The translations under genes and the position numbers were made by a program. From Hyaloraphidium curvatum SAG 235-1 (taxonomy: Eukaryota > Fungi > Monoblepharomycota), in the NCBI GenBank assembly GCA_025558095.1, contig JAIVFI010000009.1, positions 124,001 to 188,000 on the forward strand: a stretch of 64,000 nt of DNA, read 5' to 3'. The first letter of the stretch is position 1; every line of letters starts with the position of its first letter. This document shows positions 2,729-24,305 of the stretch, piece after piece. The notes below the pieces were generated by a model. The model had not been told where the DNA came from. It saw nothing but the letters and a program-made list of their open reading frames with translations, and searched no databases.

Positions 2729-4598
2729 ATGGATCTGCCTGGCGCCGCGGAGCCCGCGCCCGAGCCGCGCACGGCGGCGGCCCAGGCGCTGGAGCGCGGG
2801 CTGCGCGCCCCGCTGGAGGTGCCGCTGTGGATGCCCAACGCGGGTGTCGTGCTGGAAGCGTTGGACGCCGACCGGCCACTCGCGGTGGTGACCCTGGAGG
2901 GGCTGGCGGAGGCGGCGGATGCGGTGGCGGAATGCATCTTGTGGACGGCCGAACGCGGCCACGTCCAGCCTGCCGAGGGGGCCCTGGTGCCGGCCGCCCG
3001 CACGAAGCCGGTGGCCGTGAGAGGCGTGTTCAACATGCCCGGCTCCAGCCCCCTTCCGTGGCCTCTGCGGAGGGGCGGTCCGGCGTCGTCGCTTGCCGGC
3101 GACTCTAAGCAGGCACCTCGGCTGCACCCGGACATCTGGTACCAGATCGCCCAGTACGTGGACCGCAAGGTCTGGTTTCAGCTGCACATGGTATGCAGGG
3201 AAGCCTACGATGCCTCCGAAATGCTCCCGCCCTGGCGCACGCTGGCCTTCAAGCAGGCCTTCCTTTCGCGAAACCTGAGCATGCTCCTCTCACTCGCGGC
3301 ATCGCCGCGCAAGTTTGGTCACCAGATCCGCGAAGTCGTCCTCGACGGGACGGTTTGGGCCGCGGCTGACCTGTGCGGGAGCCACCAAGTGGAGCAGATG
3401 CGCGGGGTGTTTGGGAACGTGCTCGTCGCCGAGCGCGATCACCTCCTCCCACTCCTGCCCACCCTGCTGCCCAATGTGCGCAGGCTTTCGTTGCTCGACT
3501 ACTCCATCCCCGACAGTTCCCTCGACGTCCTGCTGCGCAGCTGGCCCCGGCTCGAGGTGTTCCGGTGCAACGGACATGGCGACTTTTCGCGCTCCGGCAA
3601 GGCGGTCATCTCCGTCCCTGTGATGCCCGGCGACCGGGGGTTCTTCGATGGCTGCACGCCACACCAGCGGCACCTCCGCTTCATCGACCTCTCCGGCATC
3701 CACCTGGCCCCGCACGCAGCCGGCCCGGCCGCCGATCTGGCGAGGGACATGCCGGCATTGCCGGCCCTGCGGTGTCTGGATCTGTGCGGGACCGACGCTC
3801 CCGTTGAGGTGATGACGCGCTACCCGGGGCTGTCCGCATAGCTGACGCTCCGCATTCCATGCACAGCTCGTCACAGCCCTCCTCGACAAGTCCCCCGGTC
3901 TCCGCTGCTTCGGCTACGGCCGCACGCCCGGCCAGCGCTCCCCCCGCAACCGCCGCCCCTCGGCCCCCGACGTCATATCCCGCTGCCGCGGGCTCGAGGT
4001 CCTTGTGCTCGCCGAGATCGCGCACGATTTCTTCCCTCCCATCCAACCCGGCCAGGGGCACCTGGCGTCGGGGCTGCGCAACCTCCGGTCCCTCTCAGTG
4101 CGGCAGGAAGGACAGGCCCACCCCACGTGGGCGGGGGAATACCTATCCCAGGCCGCCGGCCTGGCCACCATCGAATGGGACGCCCTCGCCGGGTCCGGCC
4201 TGGAAAGCCTCCTCAGAACCTGCGGCCACCCCCTGCGCCGCCTGGTGATCACCTCCTCCCGCCCCCGCGTGCGGCATCCCGGGGACAAGGAACCCGAGCC
4301 GAGGGACGGCGACTTCCGCGCCATCATGTCCGCGTGCCCCCTGCTCCGCGAGGTTGTGTTTGACGGGGACGTGCGCGTGGACCCCTGGAGGGCGTCGGAC
4401 CTGGTGTTCCGGTGCACAGACGTGCGGGTGATGCTTGCGCCCCCGAGTGGGGAGGATGGGGTGCAGATCGGGCTGCCCGAAGACCCGCGGATGAGGGGAC
4501 AGGTGGTGCTTCTGCGGGAGGAGGTGCAACCGGCGCTGCGGTTAGCAGAGTGCGCGGAGGCTCGGGGATGGATGGAGGGATCTGTTGCGCATAGGTGA
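2729..4598 (+). CDS. F-box-like / RNI-type LRR protein (intron ~3809-3866)
   Basis: F-box-like segment LHPDIWYQIAQYV...LHMVCRE; LRR-like units (LRFIDLSG, LRCLDLCG). An intron gtgatg...gctgac...gcacag joins ORF 2729..3841 to the frame of ORF 4005..4598. Confidence 0.7.
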
Positions 4599-5282
4599 GG
4601 TTCCCCAACCGTTTTAGTGATCGCCCCCCCGGGCGCCCGGCAGTAGGAGATCCGCCCACCAGCGGGTCCAGAGGGCCAGTGAGCCTCGCAAGAAATCCGT
4701 ACGCACGATTCGATGGGTTTCGCATCCGCGCGGGAACCCCGTTGCCGGCGTCCGACCGACCGATCGATCCTCCCCCGGCGAAGCCCCTGTCGATCCCCGA
4801 GCCGCCATCGGGAAGGCTGAGCGGATCGCGTGGCATCCTCTGCCGGCTCCGCGAGCCGAGGATGGCGCCTTTAGAAAGCCTCAACTGGACGCGTGGGGTC
4901 GGGCACTGGAAGCTCAAAAGCGCGCGTGTGTAATGAGGAGCTAGCAATCCCACCGTACACTTAGAAATCCCCCTACGCCCCAAGAATCAGCTCCTCATCT
5001 ACATTCAAACCAAAGCGCGCGCGCACACCTCTCAGAAATTAGGCGACCTAATTACATCAGGTCATCACATCAGGCCAGCACATCAGAGAAAAAATGTTTT
5101 GATCGAACAGAACACGAAACTCTACCATCAAGGCATAACATCTGCACAAAACCTGATACGAACCCAATTACTGCAGACACAAAAGGTAAATGGACCACAA
5201 GTCAGAAGTCAACTCTGGACACTGACTTCCTACCTCCTACAGACTCGTCGATCCTATCCATCAATCCGACTCAGACAAAGCC

Positions 5283-6131
5283 ATGGCTGCGATGCCGACC
5301 CTGCTGATCAAGTTCACCGACCCCGCCAGCCCAGCCCCCGAGCCAACCCAAGCCGCCGGACCCCTCCGCCCGCCGGCGGGCCCCGCGGTCGGCGGCGTCT
5401 TGATGGAGCTCTCCGATGCCCTCGGAGCCTTCTGCCGCGGGAGGATCACGAGGTTCGGGCTCCTGGTGGACTTGGAGCGCTTCCTCTCCGCCAACGGGTA
5501 CCACGCCGCCGCCAATGCCGTGAGTGCCGCGATCGGCGCGGAGATCGGGGCCGAGAGGCAGGAGCGCGTGGGGGTGCAGATGGCGGCCATAGAGGAACTT
5601 GAGGAGATGGCGCTGGCGGCGGTCAGGGAGGAAGTCGTTGCTGAGATGGCTGGGAAGGTCGCCGAGGCCGAGAGGGAGGCCGCCGAGAAGATAGAGCGGG
5701 AGGTGGACAAGGCCAGGAAGTAGGCCGTCGAAGCAGCGAGCAAGGTCAATGGTGGGTCCTTTGTGGATATCCGGGCGGATCAGCCAGCGTGCGAATAACC
5801 GGCGCGTGCAGCCGAACTCAAGGTCGTGGCTGAGAAGAAACTCAGGATGCTGGTCAACAAGTTCAAGCAGATGCGGCACGTGTCTGGCAAGGAGGTGCCC
5901 GACACCATCCCGCCCACCATCGACCCGGAGTTCTTGCAGACGCTATTGGACAAGTTCCAGAGGGCGAAGTACGCGGAAATCATCCAGATCTGTGAGAAGG
6001 TCAAACGGCAGGCTGTTGCCGGCGGTGTTGAGGGTGGGATCGTCGGCCAAGGAACGCCGGTCGATGTCGCTCAGGCCATGGAGGAAATCATCGACAAAGT
6101 CCGCAAGCTGGATCTGGTTGCAGCTGCCTAG
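5283..6131 (+). CDS. Hypothetical helical/coiled-coil protein (intron ~5720-5822; probable 5'-UTR intron 5186-5242)
   Basis: ORFs 5283..5723 and 5826..6131 can be joined by a gtaggc...caag intron. An upstream gtaaat...actgac...tacag intron-like segment is also present. Confidence 0.5.
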
Positions 6132-18835: not shown

Positions 18836-19074
18836 TGCGGGGGTCCGGGGAGTTTAGGCGGATTCTTCGCCTGACGTGACGCTGTCCACGAGGCGGCGTT
18901 TCTCCAACCTCCGAAGGTGCGCTAACTCGGGGTTGCACCTGGGTCGCCCCGGCAAACTCAGTAAGCTTACTCTTGAGACTGGATTAGGCGGTTTCCGGGG
19001 ATCGGCTCCCGCGATTCCTTGCTACAGCGGGTATCTCATTGGTGCAGACTGCTCCAGACCTCCCCAGCTACGGA

Positions 19075-20211
19075 TCAAGGCTTTCCAAGCACCCGCTCCC
19101 ACTCCAGCATCCCACCGGCCAGGTTGTACACGTCCCCGAACCCCATGGCGTTCAACAGCGCCGCCGCCGTCGCGCTCCTCACCCCCGCCCGGCACACCAG
19201 CACGACCCTCTTGCCCCTGTGCGGCTCCAGCTCGGCGATACGCGACGGCAGAAGGTGCAGCGGGATCTCGATCGCGCTGGGGAGTTTAGGTAGCTCCGCG
19301 AACTCCTCGGGGAGCCGCACGTCGACGGCCACGGCGGCGTCGGGGCCCGATGCGAGCAGCGCGGCGAGCTCGTGTGGGCGGATCTGGCGGATCGCGTTGA
19401 GCTGCGGGTAGGTGGGCAGCTCCTTCAGCTGGTGCTTGTCGTCCAGCGCCGTGGCGTTCATCTGCAACGACTCCATGATCTTGTCCGGGAGCGGCAGCCC
19501 GAGGTTCTCCATGATGTGCCTGTACTCCTCCAGCGTCTTGCCGGCCAGCCGCGGGTTCGTCGCCCTCTCCCTCCCGATCGTGCTCGACGTGTTGAACCTG
19601 TAATCGTGCGCCGGGAACACCAGCGTCTCGTCCGGCAGCGAGAAAAGTCTCTGGGCGCTCGCGTAGGACTGGCCCGCGTCGCCGCCTGCAAAGTCCGTCC
19701 GCCCCGTGCCCCCGATCAGCAGCACGTCCCCCGTGTATGCCGCGCGCCCGGCCAGGACGGTCAGCGAGTCGGGAGTGTGCCCCGGGGTCGCCCACACCAG
19801 CAGCTCCTGCGTGCCGAGAGGGAGGGAATCCCCGTCGCGGAGGTGCACGTCCACCCTCGGCGCGGGCGACTCCCGGGAAGCGGCGTACCGCGCTCCCGTC
19901 AACCGGCGCAGCTCAAACGCCCCCGACACGTGGTCCGCGTGGGTGTGGGTGTCCAGCACCGTCTCGAGCTTCAAGCCATGGTAGGCCATGTAGGCGAGGT
20001 AGAGCGGCACGTTGTCGCGGAGGGGATCAACCAGCGCGCACGCGCGGGAGGATGGGTCGGCGAGGATGTACGTCTTGCACGAACGGTTGTTGAGCTCGAT
20101 CGAGGTGAGCGCGCCGAGGGAAACGGCGGGCTGCGCGGAGGTCGCGTCCGGAACGGAGGCGGAGGAGGTCGCGTGGCCCCGGAAAAGGGGGCGGCGGAAG
20201 GAACGGAGCAT
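19075..20211 (-). CDS. Persulfide dioxygenase (ETHE1-like MBL fold)-rhodanese fusion with a putative mitochondrial presequence; intronless
   Basis: THTHADH, TPGHT, YTGDVLLIGGTGRTDF, VFPAHDY, STIGRERATNPRL; C-terminal rhodanese DVRLPEEF...VCRAGVRS...NLAGGMLEW; N-terminus MLRSFRRPLFRGHATSS. Confidence 0.92.
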   Translation of the reverse strand: MLRSFRRPLFRGHATSSASVPDATSAQPAVSLGALTSIELNNRSCKTYILADPSSRACALVDPLRDNVPLYLAYMAYHGLKLETVLDTHTHADHVSGAFELRRLTGARYAASRESPAPRVDVHLRDGDSLPLGTQELLVWATPGHTPDSLTVLAGRAAYTGDVLLIGGTGRTDFAGGDAGQSYASAQRLFSLPDETLVFPAHDYRFNTSSTIGRERATNPRLAGKTLEEYRHIMENLGLPLPDKIMESLQMNATALDDKHQLKELPTYPQLNAIRQIRPHELAALLASGPDAAVAVDVRLPEEFAELPKLPSAIEIPLHLLPSRIAELEPHRGKRVVLVCRAGVRSATAAALLNAMGFGDVYNLAGGMLEWERVLGKP

Positions 20212-20438
20212 TGAGAATGAAAGAGCTACGCGAGGAGACGCGCAAAGCGGCATTCTGACTGCCGAGATTCGAGACAGGTGCTCAAGAACTTCGTGGTCGA
20301 CTCTGTTTTTGAGACGAAACCAATCGCGCGCGCGGGTGCGCGATCGTAAACGCCCTCCTTCGCTTCTGGGGACCTTGATATGGCGTCGAATCCTTTTTAT
20401 CTTTGATCCCCGTCGTTTGACGAGTGACGCCACCGGCG

Positions 20439-21410
20439 ATGGCGGCACAGCGACCCCAACTCGCGTTCCAGCATGCCCTCCGATTCGGCATCGTCTGTCT
20501 CCCCCTGTGCTCAGCGCCTAGACAACGCTAAACCTGTCGTTTGATTGTAGATCCGGGCCAGGCCGAATCGGTTCAAGATGGTCGTCGACGTGGACGGAGA
20601 ACAAATTGAGGCCCACTGCCCTGCGACCGGCCGCATTGGCAACTTGACCTTTACCGACATCGTGGGCTCAAGGCCTTTATGTGCATCCTGTTCTCGTCTG
20701 ACGCTCCTTTCGTGCAGCCCTGCCTCGTCTCCGACTCCCATTCTCCCCCGCTTCCCGCCCTCGGCAAGCCCAACGCATCCCGAAAGACCCGCTTCACCGT
20801 CGAAGCCATCTCCCTCTCCCCCCTCGAATCCTTCGGCACCGGCGCCCCCTCCCCCGACGAATCGTGGATCGGGATCAACCAGGGCCGCACCAACCGCTTC
20901 GTGGAGCACTTCCTCCGCGCCGGCAACCTGCCCGACCTCATCCCTTCTTCGACCCCGGGCGCGGAAACAACGATCAAGAGGGAGCAGACCGTCGGCGGCT
21001 CCAAGATCGACCTCGTCGCGCAGAGCTCCACGGGCACCGCCTACATCGAGGTCAAGACGCCGCTCATCCACCTTCCCACCGCCGGCCACCCGCGCGCCTC
21101 GCCAGACACGAAGAAGCTCGATTCGTACCACCGCCTCGTGAAGCACTTTGGGGACCTGGGCAACGCGCTGCCGGCGCCGGGGCGGGGTGGCCGGAAAAAG
21201 CGCACGGCGGACCGGTCGGTGCTCCTACTGACGTTCCAGTACGACGCGCCGCAGTTCAGGCGGCCCCCGGCGACGGCGGTGATCAAGGCCATCAGCGACG
21301 CGGCGGATGCGGCGGTCAAGAGAGGGGTGGAGTTCTACCAGCTCAACCTGAAGCTGAGGAGGGACGGGGTGGAGCTGATCAGATGCTGGAAGCTGCCCGA
21401 TGACTACTAG
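20439..21410 (+). CDS. sfsA: SfsA (sugar fermentation stimulation protein A) family DNA-binding / PD-(D/E)xK nuclease-fold protein (introns 20493-20550, 20662-20717)
   Basis: Spliced product MAAQRPQLAFQHALRFGI|IRARPNRF..AHCPATGRIG..|PCLVS..RKTRFTVEAI..WIGIN..IKREQTVGGSKIDL..YIEVK..RLVKHFGDL..AVKRGVEF reproduces the SfsA motif order. Confidence 0.88.
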
Positions 21411-21534
21411 TGCGAGGGGCAATGAAGTGGTCGGATTTCTCTCGACAAGGGGAACTGCTGACATGGTAGTGGTGTACTAAGTCGCTCGGCGGTCGGAAGG
21501 AAAAGCAGTCTCATTGCAACATCTCCGCTTTACT

Positions 21535-23862
21535 TTAGAGCCTGCCCGCGCGGCTGTCCCTTTTCAGGTGCACCACGACGGGAGCAACATCGCCGCGCCG
21601 GTACGGAGCCACCAGCCCCCTCGCCATTAGCTCCTGCCCCGACATGATCCGCCGCGCGCCGCCGTAGTAGTAATCCAGCGAATACCTGGCGTCCGCGTCC
21701 AGCCCGTGCAGCCTGACCGTCGCATCCTTCTGGTTCGCCGAGCCCGAGGGCCGGTAGTGCAGCACCATGGCTTCCGATCGGTCCTTGGTCACGAACATCA
21801 CCGCGACCTCGTTGGACTTTGCGTGGGATCCGTACGGCGACCGCAGCCGGAACATGTCCCCCAGCTGCACGATGTGCCGGCGCTCCTTGAACCACGCCAC
21901 GTCCCTCGCGACCTCGTCCCACTCCTTGGCCGGCATCTTGGTCAGGTCCAGCTCGTATCCCAGCACGCCGGCCATCGCCACCGCCGTCCTGGCCCTGAGC
22001 GACGTCTGCCTCCCGGTCTGGTGGTTGGGCACCGCGCTCACGTGGCTCGACATCACCATCGCGGGCAGGAAGAGGCTCGCCCCGTGCTGTATCTCCAGGC
22101 GCGCCACGGCGTCCGTGTCGTCCGAGATCCAGTACTGCCCGAAGAAGCTCATGAGCGCGTAGTCGGACCGCCCGCCGCCGCCGGCGCAGCCTTCCCAGAT
22201 GATGTCGGGGAACGCAGAGGTGAGGCGGAAGAAGAGGGTGTAGACGCCGAGCACGTGCCGGTGCCTGTACCCTTCGTACCGGGCGTCCCGCTCGGATCCC
22301 CAGGCTTCCGCGGGGCCGGAGTGGGCAAACTGCCTGTTGCTGTCGACCTTGCAGTAGCTTATCCTCGCCGATCGCAGCACCGCCGAGATGGCGTCGAACA
22401 GGTGGTCGCGCACCTGCGGCAGCGACATGTCCAGGATGAGCTGGTTCCGGCCCTCGGTCCGCGGCCGGCCTGCGAACGAGAGGCACCAGTCCGGATGGGC
22501 GCGGTACAGGTCCGAATCGGGGGAGACCATCTCCGGCTCGAACCAGAGCCCGAAGGAGACCCCGCGGGCGTTGATCCTGTCCGCCAGGGGCGCCAGCCCG
22601 CCGGGAAGCTTCCTCCTGTCCACGAACCAGTCCCCCAGGCTCGAATTGTCGCTGTCCCTTTTGCCGAACCACCCGTCGTCGAGCACGAACAGCTCGATCC
22701 CCAGGTCGGCGGCCTTGTCCGCGATCTTCTCCAGCTTGGCCTGGTCGAAATCGAAGTACGTCGCCTCCCAGTTGTTGCACAGGATCGGCCTGACCCTCTC
22801 GGCGTACTGCGGCGGGATCACGGAATACCGCACGTGGTCGTGGAGCATCTGGCTGAGCGCCGTCAGCCCGCGGTCCGATTTGGCGAGCACCGCCTCGGGC
22901 GCCGAGAATTTGGCACCGGGGGCGAGCGTCCACGAGGCCACCTCGGCGTTCAGTCCGCCCTGCACCCGCACGCCCTCGTCCTCGTCCCGCTCGACCGACA
23001 AAGTCCAGTCGCCGCTGTAGGCGACCGCGAACGCCCACGCGTCGCCGGCGTATTCCGTCGTCGACGAATCGCACAGGTATATTCCGGGCCAGGACTGGTG
23101 CGAGGAGATGCCGTTGCGCGAGCGGGTCGAGAAATGGGAGGCGACGGGCTCGCGGACGAGGGAGAACTCGCGGGCCCAGGAGCCGCGCGTGCAAATCACG
23201 TCCGGGGGCGAGCCGGACGTGTTGCGGTCCAGCGAGGAGGACGACATGATGTCGACCGAGAAGGAGTAGGCGCGCGCGAGCCGGATCGGGTTCGTGGGGT
23301 TGGCGTTGACAAAAGTGACGTTCCGGAGGAGCACCGAATCTGCCGTGGAAAACACCGTGTAGTGAATGAGCACCCTGAGACCCGTGACGGCGTCCGAGAG
23401 CGCGATTTCCAGGGTCTCGGCCGCGGCACCGAGGGGCACCCTGCCTCCGGGCAGCACGCCCTCAGCTTCGGGCACCTTTTCGGCCAATCCGGCATGGATC
23501 CGGTGCGATTCGTAGACCAAGTCCAACGCCGGCTTCGTGCCGCCGCCCTCGAGGAGCTCGTAGGCCTTGAACGCGGGCGGGCGGAAGTCGCCGGCTTCGC
23601 CGTACGGGTACTCGAGCGGCAGCCTGTTGAGCGAGAATGGCGGGCCGGGATCGGTCCCCGGGATGGAGTACTCGCGCGGCTGCGCGGGAATCGCGTCCAA
23701 CACGAACGAATCGGGGTGGTGGGAGAGGTCGCCGAGCGGGGAGCCCCAGTGCACGAGGACGGGCCATTTGCCGTGGTAGAGGCCGACGACGTACTCCTGG
23801 CGCCCGGCGCGGATGCGGAAGATGCCGAGGCGCGCGTCGTGAGAGATCAGCGGCGATGCCAT
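21535..23862 (-). CDS. Alpha-galactosidase, glycoside hydrolase family 36; intronless, no signal peptide
   Basis: NNWEATYFDFD, ELFVLDDGWFGKRD, FGLWFEPEMVSPDSDLYRAHPDW, nucleophile region KVDSNR, EGCAGGGGRSD, acid/base WISDDTD, HVSAVPNHQTGR. Confidence 0.95.
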   Translation of the reverse strand: MASPLISHDARLGIFRIRAGRQEYVVGLYHGKWPVLVHWGSPLGDLSHHPDSFVLDAIPAQPREYSIPGTDPGPPFSLNRLPLEYPYGEAGDFRPPAFKAYELLEGGGTKPALDLVYESHRIHAGLAEKVPEAEGVLPGGRVPLGAAAETLEIALSDAVTGLRVLIHYTVFSTADSVLLRNVTFVNANPTNPIRLARAYSFSVDIMSSSSLDRNTSGSPPDVICTRGSWAREFSLVREPVASHFSTRSRNGISSHQSWPGIYLCDSSTTEYAGDAWAFAVAYSGDWTLSVERDEDEGVRVQGGLNAEVASWTLAPGAKFSAPEAVLAKSDRGLTALSQMLHDHVRYSVIPPQYAERVRPILCNNWEATYFDFDQAKLEKIADKAADLGIELFVLDDGWFGKRDSDNSSLGDWFVDRRKLPGGLAPLADRINARGVSFGLWFEPEMVSPDSDLYRAHPDWCLSFAGRPRTEGRNQLILDMSLPQVRDHLFDAISAVLRSARISYCKVDSNRQFAHSGPAEAWGSERDARYEGYRHRHVLGVYTLFFRLTSAFPDIIWEGCAGGGGRSDYALMSFFGQYWISDDTDAVARLEIQHGASLFLPAMVMSSHVSAVPNHQTGRQTSLRARTAVAMAGVLGYELDLTKMPAKEWDEVARDVAWFKERRHIVQLGDMFRLRSPYGSHAKSNEVAVMFVTKDRSEAMVLHYRPSGSANQKDATVRLHGLDADARYSLDYYYGGARRIMSGQELMARGLVAPYRRGDVAPVVVHLKRDSRAGRL

Positions 23863-24305
23863 GGCGAATGCGGCCTCAGAATGCGGTGGTGACGACGCGT
23901 CGACGGTCTCGACGGGGTTACTTGACTTGATCTGCACTCGTCCGATCACCCAAGATCTTCTGCGCCGGGATGGAAAGCTAAGAGATCCGAGAGCACGAGC
24001 TCGTCTTCCTTCTTCCTCGCTGTTGAGATGGGTCAATTGAGGAGCGTCTTTGCGGGTCCGAACAAGCATTCGAGGCTACAGGGGCCCATGGCAAGGATGC
24101 AGGCATCAAAGCAATCGGCAAAGTCCTGTTACGAAAGCATCCATCCTGTCTTTCGAGGTTGCTTCGGTGGCATTTCCTGCCGCTTGCCGGGGGTGGGCGA
24201 GAAATCGGTCATCCGCCGCCTGCCCGCCGCCCGTGCCCGTGTCGATCGGACTCCGAGGGCCGAGGACGGCATTCGCCCCCGGAATCCCCCGCGCATCCGG
24301 AGGCG

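What the first reader, a model, noticed from the sequence alone, without database searches (positions are those of the whole stretch)
20439..21410. Spliced eukaryotic SfsA-family nuclease-fold gene
Seen: two GT-AG introns (20493-20550, 20662-20717) whose removal gives a complete SfsA, with the OB-fold start (RPNRF, AHCPATGR, RKT), catalytic-type motif E...SKIDL...YIEVK, RLVKHFGDL and RGVE. Known: SfsA is a widespread but poorly understood bacterial/archaeal DNA-binding PD-(D/E)xK protein and is not a standard fungal gene. Inference: a horizontally acquired, intron-domesticated nuclease. It carries a basic insertion (PGRGGRKKR) that could be a gained nuclear localisation signal, suggesting an undescribed nuclear DNA repair or defence role.
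Basis: partly seen in the sequence, partly recalled or inferred. Interest (0 to 1): 0.8.

Follow-up and report, generated by a model that had tools for sequence, protein, structure and literature searches.

The report
Old fungal SfsA nuclease gene, spliced
This is a real, expressed, correctly spliced SfsA-type nuclease gene of the chytrid-like fungus Hyaloraphidium curvatum, but it belongs to an old intron-bearing gene lineage shared by several early-diverging fungal phyla, not to a recent bacterial import.

Summary
Three exons (20439-20492, 20551-20661, 20718-21410, + strand) encode a 285-aa protein. It is identical to the deposited 'hypothetical protein DFJ74DRAFT_661808 [Hyaloraphidium curvatum]'. 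Both GT..AG introns are missing, to the base, from a contig of a public run whose RNA label is only a guess. Pfam SfsA_N and SfsA both score above their cut-offs. The E144/D153/E166/K168 nuclease motif is invariant in 60 homologues. An AlphaFold model (pLDDT 91.6) matches the solved E. coli and Pyrococcus SfsA structures.

Homologues occur in Gonapodya, Spizellomyces, Syncephalis, Thamnocephalis, Bifiguratus and Endogone. The 11 rows taken as fungal (two are unnamed near relatives) form one clade (98/95 support). The named fungal genes share up to six intron positions across phyla, and three have a CBF/Mak21 gene nearby. Any prokaryote-to-eukaryote transfer was ancient, and the donor is unresolved.

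The basic patch (GRGGRKKRTA) lies in a loop absent from prokaryotic SfsA. K/R clusters recur in that loop in other eukaryotic members, which fits a nuclear localisation signal but is untested. The genome also holds a second, alga-like SfsA gene. Verdict: a new member of a known kind, of modest interest.

The parts
20439..20492 (+). Exon 1 (M1-I18), the start of the OB-fold region
   Evidence: Translation. The same N-terminus is contiguous with exon 2, with no intron, in relatives L003 and P0004. The transcript-derived contig joins 20492 to 20551.
20493..20550 (+). Intron 1, 58 nt, GT..AG, phase 0. It is specific to this lineage.
   Evidence: Skipped exactly in the run X1 contig. GC is 0.53 against 0.66 for the exons. 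It is absent in close relatives L003 and P0004 and matches no intron position of the other fungi.
20551..20661 (+). Exon 2 (I19-I55), OB-fold strands with RPNRF and HCPATGRIG
   Evidence: Pfam SfsA_N, E 4.1e-7, 30.4 bits, above the cut-off of 25.
20662..20717 (+). Intron 2, 56 nt, GT..AG, phase 0. It is shared with near relatives.
   Evidence: Skipped exactly in the run X1 contig. The same position holds a 104-nt GT..AG intron in L003 and is read through in P0004.
20718..21410 (+). Exon 3 (P56-Y285 plus TAG): the end of the OB domain and the whole nuclease domain
   Evidence: Translation. Pfam SfsA, E 1.1e-9. 100% identical to P0001.
20560..20813 (+). SfsA_N OB-fold domain (residues 22-87, interrupted by intron 2)
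   Evidence: PF17746, 41.1 bits on P0001. Beta strands 15-61 and 81-86 in the model.
20889..21362 (+). SfsA PD-(D/E)XK nuclease domain (residues 113-270)
   Evidence: PF03749, 37.8 bits on P0001. The six-frame genome hit falls at the same coordinates. Fold match to 4dap and 4dav.
20982..21056 (+). Catalytic residues E144 (20982-20984), D153 (21009-21011), E166 (21048-21050) and K168 (21054-21056)
   Evidence: Invariant in 12 eukaryotic and 60 mixed homologues. They align with the ID...EVK motif of E. coli SfsA (PMC1189080).
21180..21209 (+). Loop insertion GRGGRKKRTA (residues 210-219), specific to eukaryotic members: a candidate nuclear localisation signal
   Evidence: Under 20% of prokaryotic rows have residues in these columns. 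Confidence in the model is lower here (pLDDT block about 70). Basic clusters occur in the same loop of P0002, P0003, P0007, P0009 and of P0122, P0178. P0140 also has a KRKR, but its position relative to this loop was not checked.

Best explanation
The locus is a functional, transcribed nuclear gene of Hyaloraphidium curvatum. It encodes a divergent SfsA-family protein with an N-terminal OB-fold nucleic-acid-binding domain and a C-terminal PD-(D/E)XK nuclease domain. It is one member of an old fungal SfsA lineage that already carried introns in the common ancestor of the chytrid-type fungi, Zoopagomycota and Mucoromycota. No Dikarya protein appeared in the hit lists, which would fit a later loss. 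Hyaloraphidium lost the ancestral introns and carries two of its own. Inferred mechanism: a metal-dependent endonuclease that holds DNA (or RNA) with the OB domain and cleaves it with E144/D153/E166/K168, as modelled on the Pyrococcus SfsA-DNA complex. It has no N-terminal targeting peptide and has a K/R-rich surface loop, so it most likely works in the nucleus or cytosol. Shown here: gene structure, splicing, family and fold, conserved active site, fungal clade, shared introns. Inferred: catalysis, substrate, localisation, cellular role.
For: The gene model equals the deposited protein. Both introns are removed in a transcript-derived contig. Pfam SfsA_N and SfsA score above their cut-offs. 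The AF2 model has pLDDT 91.6 and pTM 0.90. Its best PDB matches are E. coli SfsA 4dap (E 3.6e-14, TM 0.78) and P. furiosus SfsA-DNA 4dav (E 2.5e-12). The profile also finds 4dap by sequence at 1.4e-18. Catalytic residues are invariant. The fungal clade of 11 rows has 98/95 support and appears in 99% of bootstrap trees. Shared intron positions: CHCP|xTGRIG phase 1 in five genera; EVK|TPL phase 0 in four; RLVK|HFG phase 0 in four; F|TVEAISL phase 2 in four. A CBF/Mak21 gene lies beside SfsA in Thamnocephalis and Endogone and three genes away in Syncephalis. GC is 0.661 and GC3 is 0.874, equal to the neighbours and the window. The gene lies on a long scaffold of the 31.9-Mb assembly.
Against: No biochemical activity is known for any eukaryotic SfsA, and the literature found leaves even bacterial SfsA without a defined role (PMC1189080, PMC3424549). 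The protein scores only 45.6 bits against the NCBIfam equivalog TIGR00230 (cut-off 126.45), so it is not an equivalog of E. coli SfsA. Hyaloraphidium shares none of the ancestral fungal intron positions, so intron evidence for vertical descent is indirect for this species. Branching inside the fungal clade does not follow the species tree and is poorly resolved. Absence from Dikarya rests only on their not appearing in capped hit lists. The RNA nature of run X1 is a guess by the tool; the spliced contig is the only argument for it.
Confidence: 0.8

Rival explanations
1. Recent horizontal transfer from a bacterium or archaeon into the Hyaloraphidium lineage, followed by intron gain.
For: SfsA is mainly prokaryotic (PMC3424549). 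Both Hyaloraphidium introns are lineage-specific and short. The neighbouring genes were noted by another reader as bacterial-type (s1-712506). Prokaryotic hits reach about 40% identity.
Against: The protein groups with 10 other rows taken as fungal at 98/95 support. Those fungi carry shared old introns. Composition is fully host-like. The neighbour genes are not linked to SfsA in a close relative (L003) or in six other eukaryotic loci.
Confidence: 0.04
2. One or a few ancient transfers from an uncultivated prokaryote (relatives named as DPANN archaea or Patescibacteria) into an early eukaryote or early fungus, or from eukaryote to eukaryote, followed by vertical descent. This rivals descent from the first eukaryotes and is compatible with the best explanation's fungal history.
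For: The eukaryotic distribution is patchy: early fungi, Hondaea, Botryococcus. The closest named prokaryotic hits are Woesearchaeota, Altiarchaeota, Micrarchaeota and Patescibacteria. Fungi plus Hondaea sit next to that group in the tree. A single clade of all 16 eukaryote-like rows is not rejected (p-AU 0.238).
Against: The deep branches are weak (88/0 and 66/64). The tree is unrooted and built only from the best hits. Long branches (Botryococcus, Elusimicrobia) are involved. No donor can be named.
Confidence: 0.5
3. The protein is a non-catalytic DNA-binding regulator, as first proposed for E. coli SfsA, not a nuclease.
For: E. coli SfsA was described as binding DNA non-specifically and as affecting mal gene expression (Takeda 2001, as cited in PMC1189080 and PMC3424549). 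No nuclease assay was found in the papers searched.
Against: All four catalytic residues are invariant across 60 very divergent homologues. That is hard to explain without catalysis.
Confidence: 0.12
4. The gene is an assembly contaminant or a decaying pseudogene.
For: None beyond its prokaryote-like family.
Against: It has spliceosomal introns. It lies on a long scaffold of the assembly, between genes of the same composition. It is transcribed and spliced. The reading frame is intact and the conserved residues are all kept.
Confidence: 0.01

Closest known systems
SfsA (sugar fermentation stimulation protein A, NCBI name 'DNA/RNA nuclease SfsA') of E. coli (PDB 4dap) and Pyrococcus furiosus (PDB 4dav, with DNA); Pfam PF17746 plus PF03749
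   Same: Same two-domain layout (OB fold plus PD-(D/E)XK), same catalytic E...D...EVK motif, and the same fold over the whole length (TM 0.78 normalised to the solved chains).
   Different: Only about 20% identical, and well below the TIGR00230 equivalog cut-off. It has five insertions relative to prokaryotic members (residues 65-74, 93-99, 134-138, 157-159, 210-219), one of them a K/R-rich loop. It is encoded by a spliced nuclear gene.
Unnamed SfsA homologues of other early-diverging fungi (for example Gonapodya M427DRAFT_59085, Syncephalis BDF22DRAFT_682669, Endogone BC937DRAFT_90599, Thamnocephalis THASP1DRAFT_23683)
   Same: Same clade (98/95). Shared motifs FTVEAISL, WIGINQ, VKTPLIHLP, RLVKHFG, YDAPxFxRPPAT and the C-terminal LxDDY. 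Basic patches in variable loops.
   Different: Those genes keep 4-8 introns at positions shared across phyla. Hyaloraphidium has lost them all and has two different ones. It also lacks the long N-terminal extensions of the Zoopagomycota and Endogone proteins.
Second SfsA-family gene of the same genome (P0203, DFJ74DRAFT_688259) and its green-algal and alveolate relatives
   Same: Pfam SfsA nuclease domain with the RVDY...LLEVK motif.
   Different: 408 aa, intronless, with a long N-terminal extension. It is too divergent to be found with P0001. Its relatives are in Chlamydomonas, Volvox, Scenedesmus, Vitrella and marine protists, not in fungi.
YraN / Vsr-like PD-(D/E)XK endonucleases and NucS (PDB 2vld)
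   Same: Same nuclease superfamily. YraN is the closest family by profile (PMC1189080). YraN gives a faint hit and NucS a weak fold hit.
   Different: No significant sequence or whole-fold match (TM 0.23-0.27). Domain partners differ.

Membership tests
SfsA family (Pfam PF17746 + PF03749) | N-terminal SfsA_N OB-fold domain above the Pfam gathering score | tested here: met
   41.1 bits against 25 on P0001. Exon 2 alone scores 30.4 bits.
SfsA family (Pfam PF17746 + PF03749) | C-terminal SfsA restriction-endonuclease-like domain above the gathering score | tested here: met
   37.8 bits against 22.8 on P0001. Exon 3 alone scores 38.7 bits.
SfsA family (Pfam PF17746 + PF03749) | PD-(D/E)XK catalytic signature (E, ID, EVK) | tested here: met
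   E144, D153, E166 and K168 are invariant in alignments A1 and A2. The motif is as defined in PMC1189080.
SfsA family (Pfam PF17746 + PF03749) | Three-dimensional fold of the solved SfsA structures | tested here: met
   Foldseek gives 4dap at E 3.6e-14 and 4dav at E 2.5e-12, TM 0.78 by target length. The model has pLDDT 91.6.
SfsA family (Pfam PF17746 + PF03749) | DNA binding or nuclease activity | not testable with these tools
   Needs purified protein.
NCBIfam TIGR00230 sfsA (equivalog of E. coli SfsA) | Whole-protein score of at least 126.45 bits | tested here: not met
   P0001 scores 45.6 bits. The fungal relatives score 19.6-52.5 bits and an archaeal relative 91 bits. It is a divergent subfamily, not an equivalog.
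Recently transferred (xenologous) gene | Nested within a prokaryotic clade to the exclusion of related eukaryotes, with foreign composition | tested here: not met
   It falls in a fungal clade with 98/95 support. GC and GC3 equal those of the host genes.
Known anti-phage or defence system component (PADLOC) | Match to a defence-system protein model | tested here: not met
   No PADLOC family at E <= 0.01.

The most novel reading that the evidence does not exclude
Eukaryotes have their own ancient SfsA lineage, present in early-diverging fungi, labyrinthulomycetes and some green algae and lost in Dikarya and animals. It is marked by a K/R-rich disordered loop that acts as a nuclear localisation signal. 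This would make SfsA a nuclear structure- or damage-specific DNA nuclease, whose study in a tractable early fungus could finally reveal what SfsA does in any organism.
Probability: 0.3. Interest if true: 0.5.

Novelty: new member of a known kind. Interest (0 to 1): 0.3.

Why it matters
SfsA is a widespread two-domain nuclease-like protein, and the papers found give it no agreed function. This work shows a well-supported, intron-bearing fungal clade with an intact active site and eukaryote-specific basic loops. The family is therefore not purely prokaryotic, and it has been kept under selection in nuclear genomes for a very long time. That offers a second, independent setting (fungal genetics, localisation) in which to ask what SfsA does. 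For the scan itself, the result is a caution: a 'bacterial-type' family, short introns and absence from model fungi do not show recent horizontal transfer.

Tried and rejected
1. Giant-virus vector. The protein atlas listed an SfsA cluster dominated by Nucleocytoviricota. One viral homologue was found on a 325-kb IMG/VR contig. In the tree it is a very long branch beside a Patescibacteria row, not near the fungi, so this is unsupported.

2. Three-gene transfer block (PDO-rhodanese, SfsA, GH36; note s1-712506). Neither neighbour is found near SfsA in L001-L007, and a close relative (L003) has other neighbours.

3. Defence role. No PADLOC hit.

4. PDB search with the single protein sequence found nothing. 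The profile search was needed.

5. A simple NLS regular expression does not separate eukaryotic from prokaryotic members. It matches 26 of 47 prokaryotic or metagenomic rows, and P0001 itself does not match K[KR]x[KR], having only four basic residues in a row (RKKR).

6. Paper searches found no functional study of a eukaryotic SfsA.

7. The search of protein representatives was not used. Its library has no names, so it could not test absence from Dikarya.

Exons were searched one by one by reference. Full-length analyses used the database protein P0001, which the exon-3 search returned.

Full report
OBSERVATION

The + strand between 20439 and 21410 reads as three exons. These are 20439-20492 (MAAQRPQLAFQHALRFGI), 20551-20661 (IRARPNRF...GNLTFTDI) and 20718-21410 (PCLVSDS...LPDDY, stop). 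They are separated by a 58-nt and a 56-nt intron, both GT..AG and both in phase 0.

- Exon 2 alone hits Pfam SfsA_N (30.4 bits, cut-off 25).
- Exon 3 alone hits Pfam SfsA (38.7 bits, cut-off 22.8).
- The word search with exon 3 returned a 285-aa database protein, P0001, 'hypothetical protein DFJ74DRAFT_661808 [Hyaloraphidium curvatum]'. It is 100% identical over exon 3. Its sequence equals the three exon translations read side by side.

All later full-length analyses used P0001.

EXPRESSION AND SPLICING

One public run holds the stretch. Its 4923-nt contig lies on 19000-22000 without a mismatch. It skips exactly 20493-20550 and 20662-20717, both GT..AG.

The genome assembly contains these 114 bases and the run does not, so the contig derives from spliced RNA. 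The tool's own label for the run is only 'RNA?'. The contig also runs through both neighbouring genes, so it says nothing about transcript ends.

Independent support for exon 1 comes from two relatives at 57-58% identity: a 49.8-kb Logan contig (L003) and a JGI metagenome protein (P0004). In both, the same N-terminus is contiguous with exon 2, without intron 1. Intron 2 sits at the identical position: a 104-nt GT..AG intron in L003, read through in P0004.

FAMILY AND FOLD

- P0001 hits SfsA_N (41.1 bits) and SfsA (37.8 bits).
- It reaches only 45.6 bits on the NCBIfam equivalog TIGR00230 (cut-off 126.45). It is therefore a divergent subfamily and not an equivalog of E. coli SfsA.
- A 60-sequence alignment gives an AlphaFold model with mean pLDDT 91.6 and pTM 0.90.
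- The best PDB matches of the model are E. coli SfsA 4dap (E 3.6e-14) and P. furiosus SfsA bound to DNA, 4dav (E 2.5e-12). Both have TM 0.78 by target length. Everything else is far weaker.
- The alignment profile also finds 4dap by sequence (1.4e-18). The single sequence does not.
- The PD-(D/E)XK signature defined for SfsA (ID...EVK; PMC1189080) is present as E144, D153, E166 and K168. It is invariant in 12 eukaryotic and in 60 mixed homologues.

ORIGIN

It named 'a broad vertically inherited eukaryotic clade' as a refutation.

Distribution. The searches found homologues in:
- Gonapodya prolifera and Spizellomyces (chytrid-type fungi);
- three Syncephalis species and Thamnocephalis (Zoopagomycota);
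- Bifiguratus and Endogone (Mucoromycota);
- Hondaea (a labyrinthulomycete) and Botryococcus (a green alga).

Tree. In a careful maximum-likelihood tree of 77 proteins, the 11 rows I took as fungal form one clade. Two of these are unnamed near relatives of the window's protein. Support is 98 ultrafast bootstrap and 95 SH-aLRT, and the clade is present in 99% of bootstrap trees.

Introns. I mapped the introns of five of these genes on their genomic loci. Positions are shared across phyla:
- CHCP|xTGRIG, phase 1: Gonapodya, Syncephalis, Thamnocephalis, Endogone, Bifiguratus.
- EVK|TPL, phase 0: four genera.
- RLVK|HFG, phase 0: four genera.
- F|TVEAISL, phase 2: four genera.
- K|RPNRF, phase 2: three genera.
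- GV|E.WQ, phase 0: three genera.

The gene was therefore already intron-rich in the common ancestor of these phyla. Hyaloraphidium has none of these introns. Its two are lineage-specific.

Synteny. A CBF/Mak21 gene lies next to SfsA in Thamnocephalis and Endogone, and three genes away in Syncephalis.

Composition. The exons have GC 0.661 and GC3 0.874. This matches the window (0.657) and the flanking genes.

Taken together, a recent transfer is not supported. An ancient entry into eukaryotes remains possible but the donor is unresolved.
- The fungi plus Hondaea sit beside a group whose few named members include DPANN archaea and a Patescibacteria row, with weak deep support.
- One clade of all 16 eukaryote-like rows is not rejected (p-AU 0.238).
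- I saw no Dikarya protein among the listed hits, but those lists are capped, so absence is not shown.

THE BASIC INSERTION

Relative to the prokaryotic rows, P0001 has five insertions. One of them is GRGGRKKRTA (residues 210-219, window 21180-21209). It lies between the RLVKHFG helix and the next strand, where model confidence drops to about 70.

In the same loop, other eukaryotic members carry basic clusters:
- P0002 TKRKRG, P0003 KKRKKP, Gonapodya SPKRKRKRT, Bifiguratus SRGRKRG;
- P0122 a run of lysines, and P0178 SKKKQK.

Zoopagomycota lack this insert. They have basic patches in the first insertion or in N-terminal extensions. This recurrence fits a nuclear localisation signal.

Two cautions apply. 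The usual K[KR]x[KR] pattern also occurs in 26 of 47 prokaryotic or metagenomic rows. P0001 itself has only a run of four basic residues. P0001 has no N-terminal extension beyond six residues, so an organellar presequence is unlikely. Localisation is an inference.

MECHANISM (INFERRED)

The OB domain holds nucleic acid, and the PD-(D/E)XK site cleaves it with a divalent metal, as in the DNA complex 4dav. The cellular role is unknown for any SfsA. The papers found report only non-specific DNA binding and an effect on mal genes in E. coli (PMC1189080, PMC3424549). A defence role has no support.

OTHER CHECKS

- The genome holds no second copy of this type.
- A Pfam search of the whole assembly found a second, very divergent SfsA-domain gene on another contig: L010:625-1851, 408 aa, intronless, equal to DFJ74DRAFT_688259. 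Its relatives are in green algae, Vitrella and marine protists.
- A giant-virus route, suggested by an atlas cluster, was tested with one IMG/VR homologue and not supported.

VERDICT

The family assignment and splicing are right. The evolutionary story must change from a 'horizontally acquired novelty' to a 'member of an old SfsA lineage of early-diverging fungi'. It is a new member of a known kind, already annotated as a hypothetical protein with SfsA domains. Interest is modest (0.3). The open points are SfsA's unknown function and the possible nuclear targeting.

Noticed in passing
L010:625-1851 (+) = G000:C32:450294-451520: Second SfsA-family gene of the same genome: 408 aa, intronless, equal to DFJ74DRAFT_688259, Pfam SfsA 72.8 bits, with a long N-terminal extension beginning MLLRSSSAKRSL. 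Its relatives are in green algae (Chlamydomonas, Volvox, Scenedesmus, Tetradesmus), Vitrella and marine protist transcriptomes, not in other fungi. This is an odd distribution for a fungus.
   Followed up: partly
window 19075-20211 (-): Divergently transcribed neighbour: a metallo-beta-lactamase-fold (persulfide-dioxygenase-like) protein fused to a rhodanese domain, beginning MLRSFRRPLFRG. Steczkiewicz 2012 notes SfsA next to Lactamase_B genes in archaea. Here the pairing is not conserved in relatives, so it is probably chance.
   Followed up: partly
window 21535-24069 (-): Convergent neighbour: an 844-aa intronless alpha-galactosidase-like ORF that ends 124 nt from the SfsA stop. One run X1 contig runs through all three genes, so neighbouring transcripts probably overlap.
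   Followed up: no
L006:1-2151 and 3001-4376; L007:1-3179 and 3001-4430; L002:1-605 and 4001-5493: A CBF/Mak21 (PF03914) gene lies beside or near SfsA in Thamnocephalis, Endogone and Syncephalis. This is microsynteny kept across two fungal phyla.
   Followed up: partly
L013:2989-3735 (+), IMGVR_UViG_3300045988_177154 (325 kb): A 248-aa SfsA homologue on a very large viral contig, next to a 498-aa ORF that looks transposase-like by eye. The protein atlas also lists an SfsA cluster that is 96% viral (Nucleocytoviricota).
   Followed up: partly
L003 (Logan SRR26194948 contig, 49.8 kb), 4797-5831: An unnamed relative of Hyaloraphidium (57% identical SfsA, same intron 2, no intron 1). P0002 and P0004 are further such relatives, so environmental kin of this poorly sampled lineage exist in public data.
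   Followed up: no
L004:3001-3004 (Bifiguratus), P0006 (Spizellomyces), P0007 (Gonapodya): Several deposited fungal SfsA gene models look truncated at the 5' end and miss part or all of the OB domain. The Bifiguratus model starts with a 4-nt first exis followed by the conserved phase-1 intron, so these are probably annotation errors.
   Followed up: no
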